From IMG/VR virus record IMGVR_UViG_3300048591_000147, positions 186,001-250,000 of that record: 64,000 bases of DNA, one strand, 5' to 3'. Within the stretch, counting starts at the first letter, position 1, and every line of letters starts with the position of its first letter. The position numbers and the translations under genes were made by a program. The notes under the pieces were generated by a model, which saw only the letters and a program-made list of their open reading frames with translations, was not told the DNA's origin and did no database searches. This document shows positions 50,079-51,010 of this stretch, piece by piece.

Positions 50079-50107
50079 TTGACACACTGAAAAATGTGTG
50101 TCATCAT
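50079..50107 (+). promoter_or_regulatory. Sigma70-type promoter
   Basis: TTGACA-17 bp-CATCAT with extended -10 TG. Confidence 0.7.
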
Positions 50108-50137
50108 ATCATAACATAAAACAACAGGAGATATTTT

Positions 50138-51010
50138 ATGAATAGTAACACTGGTTGGTAGGTTGCACTTGAAAATGCAACAAATTCTTTTCAATTTAAT
50201 GACGTGTCCTTCATACGTCATGGAGAAATGGTTTGGGAAGAATACAAAAAACTGATAGACGCAAAGTTTGTCGGGACATTTCTAGAAAAATACGCAGATA
50301 AACTAATAGCACTTCAACATCCAAGCGATGTTGTCAGAGACTATGCAATTTACCACGATATTGGTAAGCCGATCGCTCTGGTTATTGATCAGGACGGTAA
50401 GAAGCATTACCCAGATCATGCGAATATTTCTGCAAATTTATACGCAGAACACAATAAAGACAATCCAAATTGTGAGCTAATTTCTAACCTGATCAGAAAT
50501 GACATGCTGTTCCATGTCAATACTGGCTATGAAATTTTGCATCAAGTTAATAATCAGAACGATTTGGCTACTCTACTGTGTGTGGCATTGGCAGAGTTGT
50601 ATGCTAATAGGCCAATGTTCGGCGAAGATTCTTTTAAGATAAAATACAAGAAACTGGCTAAGAAAGCTAAATTGATTCTTGGCTATCTTTTCGAACATCC
50701 GTATTTGTATATCTTAACAAGGAAAGATTTGCCGCTTCCGCAGATAGCGGTGCAGTCTTGTCACTCTGCTATTGAGGCTGGTAAAAAATATCCTACACAC
50801 CATCACCCGTCTGTGATTCTATGTACCGTGAAAAATGAGAATGATCTCATGAATCAGGCAAGGTATTTAGAAAACAATGGTATAGAGTTTATAGAATTTA
50901 GAGAGCCTGACAGGGATAATGAGCTAACATCAATTTGTTCCGAACCTATCTATGGTGATGATAGGAAAATATTTTCAAAATTTCAATTATTCAAAGGAGA
51001 ATTAAAATGA
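50138..51010 (+). CDS. HD-domain / Pth2-like fusion protein with in-frame TAG at codon 8 (50159-50161)
   Basis: AGGAG SD and ATG 50138 in frame with ORF 50204; YHDIGKP, HYPDHA..SA; C-terminal RKDL...Q.AVQSCHSA.E, FREPD..NELT. Confidence 0.75.

What the first reader, a model, noticed from the sequence alone, without database searches (positions are those of the whole stretch)
50079..51010. HD-Pth2 gene gated by an in-frame amber codon after a 7-codon leader
Seen: promoter (50079), AGGAG SD and ATG 50138 give ATG AAT AGT AAC ACT GGT TGG TAG. The same frame then stays open for 14 codons into the annotated GTG at 50204, which has no SD and lies only five codons before the first HD-type His. TAG is a normal stop elsewhere in the window. 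Known: prfB senses RF2 through an internal stop, minigenes cause peptidyl-tRNA drop-off that Pth must clear, and Gln-tRNA is a common near-cognate reader of UAG; a tRNA-Gln(CTG) lies ~4.5 kb upstream. Inference: a peptidyl-tRNA hydrolase/tRNA-healing enzyme made only when termination is impaired or UAG is suppressed, i.e. a translation-stress sensor. This is my best candidate for an undescribed mechanism.
Basis: partly seen in the sequence, partly recalled or inferred. Interest (0 to 1): 0.85.

Follow-up and report, generated by a model that had tools for sequence, protein, structure and literature searches.

The report
Amber-gated phage tRNA-recycling gene
A jumbo-phage gene for a two-domain tRNA-recycling enzyme (HD phosphohydrolase plus Pth2 peptidyl-tRNA hydrolase) carries a stop codon eight codons after its start. 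The same early stop occurs in this gene family across many jumbo phages and matches the suppressor tRNA those phages encode, which gives the so-far "orphan" phage suppressor tRNAs a dedicated target.

Summary
AGGAG, then ATG 50138, six sense codons and TAG 50159-50161 are followed by 14 in-frame sense codons to GTG 50204 and a 268-codon HD-Pth2 ORF.

It is not an error or a recent nonsense mutation. Relatives at 95, 82, 80, 59, 53 and 44% protein identity keep leader, TAG and frame. In two of them the GTG is GTA or GTT.

Across 97 unique HD and Pth2 genes from jumbo-phage contigs, 74 have a short ATG leader (mostly 2-8 codons) and an in-frame stop: TAG 68, TGA 5, TAA 1. The rate in other ORFs of the same loci is at most 2.3%. 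Twenty-eight have no start codon between the stop and the conserved domain.

Canonical tRNA(CUA) genes lie within 10 kb in about half of the loci, often directly upstream. Three loci with opal tRNA(UCA) carry TGA instead.

Best reading: translation starts at 50138 and the enzyme is made only when UAG is decoded by a suppressor tRNA.

The weak point is that no CUA tRNA was found in the 84 of 315 kb of this genome that I could read.

I found no paper describing this. Interest is high.

The parts
50079..50107 (+). Sigma-70-like promoter match (TTGACA, 17 nt, CATCAT with TG); unverified
   Evidence: 10 of 12 matches, but the number of such matches in the region is no higher than in shuffles. The upstream DNA differs completely in relatives L004 and L007.
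50080..50103 (.). Perfect 8-bp inverted repeat (TGACACAC, 8 nt, GTGTGTCA) overlapping the -35 element; role unknown
   Evidence: flagged as a stem-loop on the minus strand.
50126..50130 (+). Shine-Dalgarno AGGAG, 7 nt before ATG 50138
   Evidence: An SD also precedes the leader ATG in relatives (AAGGA or AGGAG).
50138..50158 (+). Seven-codon leader MNSNTGW, the real 5' end of the coding sequence
   Evidence: Homology with relatives begins at this ATG. Leaders are MNAKTGW, MNSKTGW, MINENSW, MDRTTLISW and MKNDTTGW, with Trp before the stop in all six lineages.
50159..50161 (+). In-frame amber codon TAG followed by G
   Evidence: TAG is at the equivalent place in 68 of 74 leader-bearing family genes. 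The base after TAG is A 41, G 21, C 6, T 0.
50162..50203 (+). 14 sense codons (VALENATNSFQFND) between TAG and the annotated GTG; coding, and reachable only by readthrough
   Evidence: Searches show the same length and a conserved SFQF(N/D)D motif at 59% and 53% identity; modelled as helix plus strand, pLDDT 77-85. There is no start codon inside it.
50204..51010 (+). ORF as a gene caller sees it (GTG start, 268 aa, TGA stop); the stop overlaps the next gene's ATG at 51007
   Evidence: The GTG is not conserved: GTA in L009 and GTT in L011.
50207..50683 (+). HD phosphohydrolase domain of the type found in CCA/A-adding enzymes
   Evidence: Pfam HD 25.5 bits against a cut-off of 22. Profile and fold matches to 3wfp-3wfs. 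Domain limits come (L012 10046-10522).
50699..50995 (+). Pth2-fold domain (peptidyl-tRNA hydrolase 2 family)
   Evidence: PF01981 is hit by 23 of 25 aligned relatives. Foldseek matches 2zv3, 3erj, 1q7s and 1xty with TM about 0.7.
50138..51010 (+). Proposed full coding sequence: 290 codons including the amber codon, plus the TGA stop
   Evidence: Synthesis.
45016..45612 (+). tRNA cluster Ser(GCU), Met(CAU), Ser(GGA), Gln(CUG), then a terminator; it holds no CUA tRNA (context)
   Evidence: In relative L009 the homologous cluster is Ser, Met, Sup(CUA).

Best explanation
The gene is a suppressor-tRNA-dependent, amber-gated gene.

Proposed sequence of events:
1. Ribosomes load at AGGAG and ATG 50138 and translate seven codons.
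2. They meet UAG at codon 8.
3. If release factor 1 wins, a heptapeptide is released and little or no enzyme is made.
4. If an amber suppressor tRNA (anticodon CUA) decodes the UAG, translation continues in frame through the 14-codon segment into the HD-Pth2 body. The product is about 290 aa.

The stop sits in a non-conserved N-terminal leader, so any inserted amino acid should be tolerated.

This design is a hallmark of the whole jumbo-phage HD and Pth2 family. HD and Pth2 genes, fused or separate, each carry such a leader and stop, and the stop matches the anticodon of suppressor tRNA genes encoded nearby.

Shown here:
- conservation of leader, stop identity and frame;
- absence of alternative start codons in many members;
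- co-location with suppressor tRNAs and covariation of stop with anticodon;
- the protein folds.

Inferred:
- that the suppressor actually decodes the site;
- that output of the enzyme is thereby tied to suppressor activity. One guess is that it supplies a peptidyl-tRNA and tRNA-3'-end clean-up enzyme when phage-driven stop-codon suppression is on. Phage tmRNA genes sit in the same neighbourhoods in many loci.

Not shown: which tRNA reads the UAG in this particular phage.
For: 1. Conservation in the window's clade. L004/L005 (95%), L007 (82%), L008 (80%), L009 (59%), L011 (53%) and L010 (44%) all have SD, ATG, 6-8 codons, TGG TAG, and an in-frame continuation. The upstream DNA differs among them.

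2. GTG 50204 is GTA in L009 and GTT in L011, so it is not the conserved start.

3. Family-wide numbers:
- The first in-frame upstream stop is TAG in 68 of 79 loci.
- Of 97 unique genes, 74 have a leader plus stop: TAG 68, TGA 5, TAA 1.
- At 70% identity, 50 of 72 clusters carry the TAG leader.
- 28 genes have no ATG, GTG or TTG between the stop and the conserved domain, including 21 of 22 stand-alone Pth2 genes.
- Control: 36 of 1559 other ORFs (2.3%) show the pattern, and some of those are further Pth2 genes.

4. Suppressor tRNAs:
- 51 unique tRNAs with a suppressor anticodon were found in these loci. Nearly all are CUA with the canonical anticodon loop CU[CUA]AA.
- 28 of 55 loci with a TAG-gated gene hold a CUA tRNA within 10 kb. 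In 11 genes it lies within 500 nt.
- It is directly upstream of the gene in L011, L016, L019, L023, L050 and L088.

5. Covariation of stop and anticodon:
- L034 has two tRNA(UCA), and both its HD and its Pth2 gene carry TGA, while its relative L037 has TAG.
- L231 and L279 were picked only for a UCA tRNA pattern, and both have TGA leaders.

6. Reverse sampling. Of 139 loci picked only for a CUA tRNA pattern, 26 hold HD or Pth2 genes, about 17 of them with a leader plus TAG.

7. The base after TAG is a purine in 62 of 68 genes and never T. From my own knowledge of E. coli context effects, this favours suppression over termination.

8. The segment between the stop and the domain is conserved in length and character in the window's clade (SFQF(N/D)DVS). 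In other HD genes the residues just before the conserved Met look similar by eye (for example LIxDM; not quantified). It is modelled as structured.

9. Cultured phages:
- Yersinia phage fHe-Yen9-04 has SD, ATG TCT CAC TAG, then an unannotated Pth2 ORF with no start codon. An annotated tRNA-Sup-CTA lies 3.1 kb downstream.
- XacN1 has ATG AAG TAG in frame before ORF364. Its authors report CUA suppressor tRNAs whose targets they could not find.
Against: 1. No CUA tRNA was found in the window (ARAGORN, also with introns and relaxed thresholds, and Rfam). None was found in the 10 kb beyond each end. That covers 84 of about 315 kb of this genome. The rest could not be read.

2. In the window's subclade the Val codon at 50204 is GTG. 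Termination at TAG followed by reinitiation 42 nt downstream is therefore physically possible.

3. Most HD-type relatives keep an in-frame ATG 4-13 codons after the stop. Reinitiation could give them suppressor-independent basal expression.

4. About half of the loci with a TAG-gated gene show no suppressor within 10 kb. In at least one of these (L015) a CUA tRNA pattern match lies elsewhere on the contig (L116).

5. There are no expression, proteomic or ribosome-profiling data. The runs found are low-depth metagenomes.

6. Why a tRNA-recycling enzyme should be tied to suppression is inferred, not shown.
Confidence: 0.68

Rival explanations
1. Termination-reinitiation. The seven-codon leader is an upstream mini-ORF whose only job is to load ribosomes. 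They terminate at TAG and reinitiate at GTG 50204 (in relatives, at the conserved in-frame ATG). The product is a 268-aa protein that does not depend on any suppressor.
For: The SD precedes the leader ATG and not GTG 50204. GTG is present in the window, L004, L007 and L008, the lineages in which no CUA tRNA is seen nearby. Many HD genes have an ATG 4-13 codons after the stop.
Against: - Reinitiation needs neither a particular stop codon nor a particular frame. Yet the stop is TAG in 68 of 74 genes although TAA is the commonest stop in these genomes, and it is in frame in about 75% of genes where one third would be expected.
- The stop changes to TGA exactly where the phage encodes UCA tRNAs.
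- 28 genes have no start codon after the stop.
- GTG is GTA or GTT in L009 and L011.
- The 14 codons are conserved as protein and modelled as structured.
- A start at 50204 would put the N-terminus five residues before the first catalytic His.
Confidence: 0.17
2. The UAG is an RF1 or termination-stress sensor read by near-cognate tRNA-Gln(CUG), including the phage copy at 45538-45612. The enzyme is made when termination fails, with no dedicated suppressor.
For: A genuine tRNA-Gln(CUG) lies 4.5 kb upstream. No CUA tRNA was found in 84 kb of this genome. Readthrough always reflects the balance between tRNA and RF1, so RF1 shortage would also open the gate.
Against: - L004 keeps the TAG but its tRNA-Gln homologue has a 2-nt deletion in the anticodon arm and has lost G10.
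- L007, L008, L009 and L011 have no tRNA-Gln nearby.
- Family-wide the partner is a cognate CUA or UCA tRNA whose anticodon covaries with the stop. An RF-sensing model does not predict this.
- From my own knowledge, near-cognate reading of UAG is normally around a per cent or less.
Confidence: 0.08
3. Genome-wide reassignment of TAG (genetic code 15), as in crAss-like or Lak phages. The gene would be just one of many recoded genes.
For: A gene caller translated the TAG of relative P0014 as Gln. Suppressor tRNAs are present in relatives.
Against: About 90% of the window is covered by intact standard-code ORFs of at least 100 aa, including ORFs of 3112, 1226 and 972 aa and the gp23-like capsid gene. 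TAG ends three ORFs, and only this gene has the leader-TAG pattern. XacN1 and other cultured carriers are annotated in the standard code, and the XacN1 authors found no readthrough extensions.
Confidence: 0.03
4. Artefact or decay: a sequencing error, a recent nonsense mutation, or a pseudogene.
For: None beyond the bare presence of a stop. One relative (L006) has a deletion that removes the leader and the first 16 or so codons.
Against: The same TAG occurs in independent assemblies from different samples and sources: Logan, ENA, JGI, IMG/VR and GenBank isolates. The downstream ORF is intact and under protein-level conservation. A second run's contig agrees at the site.
Confidence: 0.01
5. Translational bypassing of the T4 gene 60 type. 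The ribosome takes off at TGG 50156 before the UAG and lands on TGG 50234.
For: This is a T4-like phage (gp23, gp13, gp32). A stop directly follows a potential take-off codon, and a matching in-frame TGG lies 78 nt downstream.
Against: The skipped stretch is conserved as protein and includes the first catalytic His. Relatives outside this clade have other codons before the stop and no matching landing codon. No significant RNA structure is present (z = -0.97), and the hairpin behind the TAG is not conserved in L007 or L009.
Confidence: 0.01

Closest known systems
Stop-codon recoding in phages by phage-encoded suppressor tRNAs (code 15 and code 4 crAss-like, Lak, Jade and Agate phages; Borges et al., bioRxiv 10.1101/2021.08.26.457843)
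   Same: A phage infecting a standard-code host encodes a suppressor tRNA. Phage genes with in-frame TAG or TGA can be completed only once that tRNA is active. The stop that is recoded matches the tRNA anticodon.
   Different: In those phages tens to hundreds of genes are recoded, mostly late, structural and lysis genes, and coding density collapses under code 11. Here the genome is standard-code, and in 64 kb only this one gene carries the stop. In relatives only the HD and Pth2 genes carry it. The stop is nearly always within the first 2-14 codons, and the gated product is itself a translation and tRNA enzyme. That paper notes suppressor tRNAs in some standard-code phages but names no target.
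Orphan suppressor tRNAs of cultured jumbo phages (XacN1, PMC5852040; phiKp24, PMC8386662; Atu_ph07, PMC6102473)
   Same: The same kind of phage and the same kind of tRNA. XacN1 itself carries the leader-TAG in front of ORF364, the homologue of the window gene.
   Different: Those papers looked for C-terminal readthrough extensions and found no target, or left the role open. Here the target is an N-terminal stop that gene callers hide by choosing a downstream start or by not calling the gene at all.
prfB (RF2) autoregulation through an early in-frame UGA
   Same: A stop codon early in the ORF of a translation-related gene makes output depend on how well that stop is read as a stop.
   Different: prfB needs a +1 frameshift, an internal SD and a slippery CUU, and its product is the factor that reads the stop, which gives direct negative feedback. 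Here the frame does not change, no internal SD is evident, and the product is not a release factor.
Programmed readthrough in viruses (Qbeta A1 protein, MuLV gag-pol) and synthetic suppressor-tRNA gates (PMC7969014)
   Same: In-frame stop, same frame continued, output set by competition between a tRNA and the release factor. The synthetic circuits use an early amber codon plus a suppressor tRNA as a feed-forward gate.
   Different: The natural viral cases use host near-cognate tRNAs at the end of a complete protein to make a minor extended form. Here the stop precedes the whole protein, and the virus supplies a cognate tRNA.
Lambda bar minigenes and peptidyl-tRNA drop-off
   Same: An SD-led ORF of 2-8 codons ending in a stop, linked to peptidyl-tRNA hydrolase biology.
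   Different: bar minigenes are free-standing and toxic when Pth is limiting. Here the mini-ORF is in frame with, and continuous with, a Pth2-family gene. Drop-off was not tested.

Membership tests
Pth2 peptidyl-tRNA hydrolase (PF01981) | Pth2 alpha/beta fold | tested here: met
   AlphaFold model pLDDT 93.8. Foldseek matches M. jannaschii 2zv3, A. fulgidus 3erj, human Bit1 1q7s and S. solfataricus 1xty with target TM 0.65-0.72, E 3e-4 to 3e-3.
Pth2 peptidyl-tRNA hydrolase (PF01981) | Significant match to the Pfam or PDB sequence family | tested here: inconclusive
   The window protein alone gives no PF01981 hit at E <= 0.01. 23 of 25 aligned relatives do (best 1.4e-7). The family profile hits Pth2 chains 24bt and 2zv3 at E 9e-4 and 0.05.
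Pth2 peptidyl-tRNA hydrolase (PF01981) | Catalytic residues of canonical Pth2 (the Lys of the GK motif, and an Asp) | tested here: inconclusive
   In the profile alignment to 24bt, the canonical 'TGKK' lines up with 'kaqk' in the family and 'LPQI' in the window. A nearly invariant Gln may therefore sit where the Lys is. The alignment is too uncertain to decide. Relative L011 also encodes a canonical Pth2 with the GK motif and without a TAG leader.
Pth2 peptidyl-tRNA hydrolase (PF01981) | Hydrolysis of peptidyl-tRNA | not testable with these tools
   Needs an enzyme assay.
HD-domain metal-dependent phosphohydrolase (PF01966) | H...HD...D metal-binding motif and a Pfam match above the cut-off | tested here: met
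   Pfam HD 25.5 bits against a cut-off of 22. H65, D66, H82, H86, D114 and H118 are invariant in 25 sequences. The first His (RHGEMVW) aligns to the EHTL of 3wfp. The fold matches the HD region of the 3wfp-3wfs tRNA nucleotidyltransferase.
Suppressor-tRNA-dependent stop-codon recoding in phages | In-frame stop conserved among homologues, with coding sequence continuing behind it | tested here: met
Suppressor-tRNA-dependent stop-codon recoding in phages | A cognate suppressor tRNA encoded by the same genome | tested here: inconclusive
   Met in relatives: L009, L011, fHe-Yen9-04, CBB and 28 of 55 loci, with covariation to TGA/UCA. In this genome none was found in the 84 of 315 kb that were readable.
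Suppressor-tRNA-dependent stop-codon recoding in phages | Many genes of the genome carry the recoded stop (a genome-level code change) | tested here: not met
   Only this gene in 64 kb. It therefore works like recoding but is not a code-15 genome.
prfB-type autoregulatory recoding | +1 frameshift at the stop, promoted by an internal SD; the product is the factor that reads the stop | tested here: not met
   The ORF continues in the same frame, there is no SD-like element within the leader, and the product is HD-Pth2, not a release factor.
T4 gene 60-type translational bypass | Matched take-off and landing codons flanking a non-coding gap | tested here: not met
   TGG 50156 and TGG 50234 do exist, but the 'gap' is conserved protein-coding sequence containing the first catalytic His.

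The most novel reading that the evidence does not exclude
Standard-code jumbo phages carry a previously unrecognised two-part module. One part is a suppressor tRNA (amber, or in some lineages opal). The other is HD and Pth2 tRNA-recycling genes whose first few codons contain the matching stop.

The tRNA and the enzymes would form a self-contained circuit, either a feed-forward clean-up or a feedback switch of decoding in the infected cell. HD genes keep a downstream ATG that could give basal expression, whereas Pth2 genes depend strictly on suppression.

This would explain why such phages keep 'orphan' suppressor tRNAs. It may also represent the first step on the way to full stop-codon reassignment.
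Probability: 0.5. Interest if true: 0.9.

Novelty: new variant of a known kind. Interest (0 to 1): 0.82.

Why it matters
1. It gives a concrete, testable target for suppressor tRNAs found in many cultured and uncultured jumbo phages that otherwise use the standard code. Their purpose has been an open question: the XacN1 authors explicitly report finding no target.

2. It shows that current annotation systematically truncates or omits these genes. The Pth2 ORF is unannotated in Yersinia phage fHe-Yen9-04, and tblastn reports no annotated feature under the match in Serratia phage BF and six Erwinia phages.

3. The stop covaries with the anticodon (TAG with CUA, TGA with UCA) in a single gene family. 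This makes it a natural, minimal model of how a stop codon can begin to be reassigned.

4. It links stop-codon suppression to peptidyl-tRNA and tRNA-end recycling and, through gene neighbourhood, to phage tmRNA. That suggests an organised phage take-over of termination and ribosome rescue.

5. Natural early-amber gates with their cognate tRNAs could serve as orthogonal parts for synthetic biology.

Tried and rejected
- **Near-identical phage records:** none found (megablast).
- **Sequencing error or recent mutation:** rejected by the conservation.
- **Code 15 for the whole genome:** rejected.
- **Conserved RNA structure at the stop:** a 6-bp hairpin follows the TAG in the window (50162-50181), but it is lost in L007 and L009 and the fold is not better than shuffles.
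- **tRNA-Gln(CUG) as ancestor or orthologue of the relatives' CUA tRNAs:** the alignment shows different arms and a different discriminator base.
- **Finding the suppressor in the window's own genome, all negative:**
  - ARAGORN with introns and relaxed thresholds gave only noise.
  - An Rfam search at permissive E-value over the tRNA cluster found nothing more.
  - Four IMG/VR pattern scans were run.
  - Walking 10 kb beyond each window end on the sister contig Ga0498928_0000044 found no tRNA.
- **Atu_ph07 (opal suppressor):** its Pth genes were not reached by tblastn with L034 queries. The 6-kb locus around its UCA tRNA (L296, identified only by its 490,380-bp contig length) holds no family member.
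- **Read laying:** it gave only fragmentary low-depth metagenome contigs. These are consistent with the TAG but carry no expression information.
- **Identity of the inserted amino acid:** the L009 and L011 suppressors have A73 and a short variable arm, which from my own knowledge hints at a Lys-type origin. I did not test this and make no claim.
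Full report
**What is in the window.**
AGGAG lies at 50126-50130. Seven bases later comes ATG 50138, followed by AAT AGT AAC ACT GGT TGG and then TAG at 50159-50161. Fourteen sense codons follow in the same frame up to GTG 50204. That GTG opens the 268-codon ORF ending at 51010. No ATG, GTG or TTG lies between the TAG and 50204, and the GTG has no Shine-Dalgarno sequence.

The promoter at 50079 is a 10-of-12 consensus match. 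Such matches are no more frequent here than in shuffled sequence, so I treat it as unverified.

tRNA-Gln(CUG) is at 45538-45612. TAG ends 3 of 50 ORFs of at least 100 aa (TAA 34, TGA 13). All large ORFs are intact under the standard code, so there is no general reassignment of TAG.

**Where the window comes from.**
It is part of a 315-kb T4-like jumbo-phage contig, IMGVR_UViG_3300048591_000147. A near-identical 314,913-bp contig exists in a sister JGI sample. It has gp23, gp13, gp32, UvsX-like and terminase genes. No near-identical DNA exists among deposited phage genomes. Near-identical fragments occur in wastewater and freshwater metagenome runs. One freshwater contig spans 50145-50320, and no difference is reported at the TAG.

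**The protein.**
Pfam finds an HD domain. A profile of 25 relatives hits Pth2 chains and the HD region of an A/CCA-adding enzyme in the PDB. PF01981 (PTH2) is hit by 23 of 25 relatives.

An AlphaFold model of the part after the TAG is confident (pLDDT 93.8, pTM 0.88). Foldseek assigns its C-terminal third to the Pth2 fold (2zv3, 3erj, 1q7s, 1xty; target TM about 0.7). It assigns the N-terminal two thirds to the HD body of the 3wfp-3wfs tRNA-processing enzyme.

So 'HD-Pth2' is right at the level of folds. Whether the canonical Pth2 catalytic Lys is kept is unclear: a nearly invariant Gln may occupy that place.

The His six codons after GTG 50204 aligns with the first metal-ligand His of HD domains. 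A protein starting at 50204 would therefore begin almost on its active site.

**The stop is conserved in close and distant relatives.**
I fetched the DNA that encodes the closest metagenomic homologues.

| Locus | Protein identity | Leader |
|---|---|---|
| L004/L005 | 95% | MNAKTGW-TAG |
| L007 | 82% | MNSKTGW-TAG |
| L008 | 80% | MNSKTGW-TAG |
| L009 | 59% | MINENSW-TAG |
| L011 | 53% | MDRTTLISW-TAG |
| L010 | 44% | MKNDTTGW-TAG |

Each leader follows a good SD. Down to L011 the leader is followed by exactly 14 in-frame codons ending in SFQF(N/D)D and a Val codon, the position of GTG 50204; L010 has 15 codons and a different sequence there. The DNA upstream of the SD is unrelated between the window and L004 or L007, so homology starts at the leader.

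In L009 the GTG is GTA, and in L011 it is GTT. The start at 50204 is therefore not conserved. The protein P0014 (L010) had been translated with Gln at the TAG by its gene caller. This explains why the N-terminus looked complete there.

**The stop is a hallmark of the whole family.**
- In the Xanthomonas phages XacN1 and Xoo-sp13 (about 40% identity), the annotated ATG is preceded in frame by SD-ATG AAG TAG and SD-ATG AAG AAG TAG.
- A scan of IMG/VR with the family alignment gave 80 loci.
- In 68 of 79 loci examined (71 of these 80 plus eight fetched earlier), the first in-frame stop upstream of the conserved domain is TAG, preceded by a short ATG leader.
- I built HMMs of the HD and Pth2 halves and searched six-frame translations with them. 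Where the two domains are separate genes, each has its own leader and stop (for example L020, L024, L025, L051, L054, L062, L063, L068, L069, L075, L080, L087).
- After removing duplicates there are 97 unique genes. Of these, 74 carry a leader plus stop: TAG 68, TGA 5, TAA 1.
- Clustered at 70% identity, 50 of 72 clusters carry the TAG leader, and four more have an internal TAG instead.
- Leaders are mostly 2-8 codons long.
- Twenty-eight genes, among them 21 of 22 stand-alone Pth2 genes, have no ATG, GTG or TTG between the stop and the conserved domain. These cannot be made without reading the stop.
- As a control, only 36 of 1559 other ORFs in the same loci (2.3%) show the pattern, and some of those are additional Pth2 genes. 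Their upstream stops are TAA 806, TGA 442 and TAG 311.
- The base after the TAG is A 41, G 21, C 6 and never T. From my own knowledge of E. coli context effects, a 3' purine favours amber suppression and a 3' U favours termination.

**The partner is a suppressor tRNA.**
ARAGORN finds tRNA(CUA) genes next to the gene in L009 and L011, about 70 nt upstream of the leader in L011. Across the loci there are 51 unique tRNAs with a suppressor anticodon. Nearly all are CUA with the canonical CU[CUA]AA loop. Twenty-eight of 55 loci with a TAG-gated gene have a CUA tRNA within 10 kb, and in 11 genes it is within 500 nt. One locus without a nearby suppressor (L015) has a CUA tRNA pattern match elsewhere on its contig (L116).

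The strongest evidence is covariation between the stop and the anticodon:
- L034 encodes two tRNA(UCA), and both its Pth2 gene and its HD gene carry TGA, while the related L037 has TAG.
- Of 118 loci picked only for a UCA-tRNA pattern, the two with clear leaders (L231, L279) have TGA.
- Conversely, of 139 loci picked only for a CUA-tRNA pattern, 26 contain HD or Pth2 genes, and about 17 of these have a leader plus TAG.

Phage tmRNA genes are frequent neighbours.

**Cultured examples and the literature.**
In Yersinia phage fHe-Yen9-04, a 108-codon Pth2 ORF follows GAGGA, ATG TCT CAC TAG. It has no start codon and is not annotated. The record annotates a tRNA-Sup-CTA 3.1 kb downstream. tblastn likewise reports no annotated feature under the match in Serratia phage BF and six Erwinia phages.

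The XacN1 paper reports CUA suppressor tRNAs and states that in-silico readthrough of the 18 amber stops identified no target. The papers on Atu_ph07 and phiKp24 leave the role of their suppressors open. A comparative review of jumbo phages notes PTH2 but nothing about stops. Work on recoded phages describes genome-wide recoding of late and lysis genes.

Five full-text searches found no description of a stop-gated Pth2 or HD gene. This is absence from the library I could search, not proof of absence.

**Mechanism.**
The best-supported reading has three steps. Ribosomes initiate at 50138. At the UAG there is competition between RF1 and a suppressor tRNA. Only suppression yields the full HD-Pth2 protein of about 290 aa.

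The 14-codon segment belongs to the protein. It is conserved in the clade, it has no alternative start, and it is modelled as a helix plus a strand packed on the HD domain.

Placing the stop in a variable leader means the inserted residue need not be a particular one. This fits the diversity of the suppressor tRNAs.

Why these enzymes are gated is inference. One possibility is that clean-up capacity for peptidyl-tRNA and damaged tRNA ends is tied to the level of stop-codon suppression, together with tmRNA. Another is a feedback loop on the suppressor itself.

**What remains open for this window.**
I found no CUA tRNA in the window or in 10 kb on either side. That is 84 of 315 kb. Pattern scans did not return the window's contig.

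In the window's subclade the codon at 50204 is GTG. Termination followed by reinitiation, giving a truncated protein, therefore cannot be excluded. I give it 0.17.

The near-cognate tRNA-Gln idea is weakened by L004. It keeps the TAG, but its tRNA-Gln homologue has a damaged anticodon arm.

**Verdict.**
It is wrong, or unsupported, about the trigger.

The case is a new variant of suppressor-tRNA-dependent recoding: a single-family, N-terminal stop matched to the anticodon in otherwise standard-code jumbo phages. It is widespread, and cultured phages make it testable.

Noticed in passing
window 48786-49469 (+): This 227-aa protein lies two genes upstream. Its N-terminal 80 aa match phrog_6408. 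Residues 131-189 match the RF-1 (GGQ) domain weakly (22.8 bits, below the cut-off). The GGQ tripeptide itself appears to be missing (read by eye), and the C-terminus is Cys-rich. The gene ends in TAG with a backup TGA two codons later. A release-factor-like domain without the catalytic motif, next to an amber-gated gene, could bear on termination. This was not tested.
   Followed up: partly
window 49475-50071 (+): A 198-aa protein directly upstream matches phrog_4806 ('histidyl tRNA synthetase', E 6e-42) and, weakly, the class II aaRS core (PF01409). It is far too short to be a full synthetase. A homologue sits in the same place in L009.
   Followed up: partly
L004 645-714: This is the homologue of the window's tRNA-Gln(CUG) in the closest relative. 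It has a 2-nt deletion in the anticodon arm (15 nt instead of 17) and A instead of G at position 10. ARAGORN does not call it, and Rfam scores it 41.5 bits. It is either a decaying tRNA or one with an unusual anticodon stem.
   Followed up: partly
L010 926-1048: Directly after the HD-Pth2 gene lies a tRNA-like gene whose anticodon arm is a 6-bp hairpin with a 4-nt loop (ARAGORN reports a 2-base 'anticodon'). It is followed by the 5' part of a tRNA with a CUCUAAC loop, that is a CUA suppressor, cut off by the contig end.
   Followed up: no
L006 2343-2470: This is a natural deletion variant. The first ~20 nt of tRNA-Met follow tRNA-Ser(GCU) and are joined directly to about codon 17 of the HD-Pth2 gene. 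The deletion removes the leader, the TAG and the first catalytic His.
   Followed up: partly
L003/L027 (phage CBB), L022, L036, L052, L072, L079: In these loci the HD gene (in L036 the Pth2 gene) has a TAG inside the domain. In L036 and L052 this is in addition to the leader stop; in the others it replaces it. CBB is therefore annotated as several small ORFs.
   Followed up: partly
L016, L019, L030, L034, L045-L047, L050, L069, L073, L079, L087: Phage-encoded tmRNA genes lie within a few kb of the suppressor tRNA and of the gated HD and Pth2 genes. This suggests a larger termination and ribosome-rescue module.
   Followed up: no
L011 2242-2625: The same phage also encodes a canonical 127-aa Pth2 with the GK motif and an ordinary ATG start. 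The upstream in-frame stop there is TAA. The gated HD-Pth2 is therefore a second, divergent Pth2 paralogue.
   Followed up: partly
window 50162-50181: A perfect 6-bp hairpin (GTTGCA, 8 nt, TGCAAC) starts at the first base after the TAG and is followed by a T-rich run. It is kept, with one G-U pair, in L004 but lost in L007 and L009.
   Followed up: yes
window 3734-4165 (-), 48786-49469 (+), 52001-52357 (-): These are the three ORFs of at least 100 aa that end in TAG. Two have a second stop within one or two codons. The third would be extended by at least 20 codons if TAG were suppressed.
   Followed up: partly
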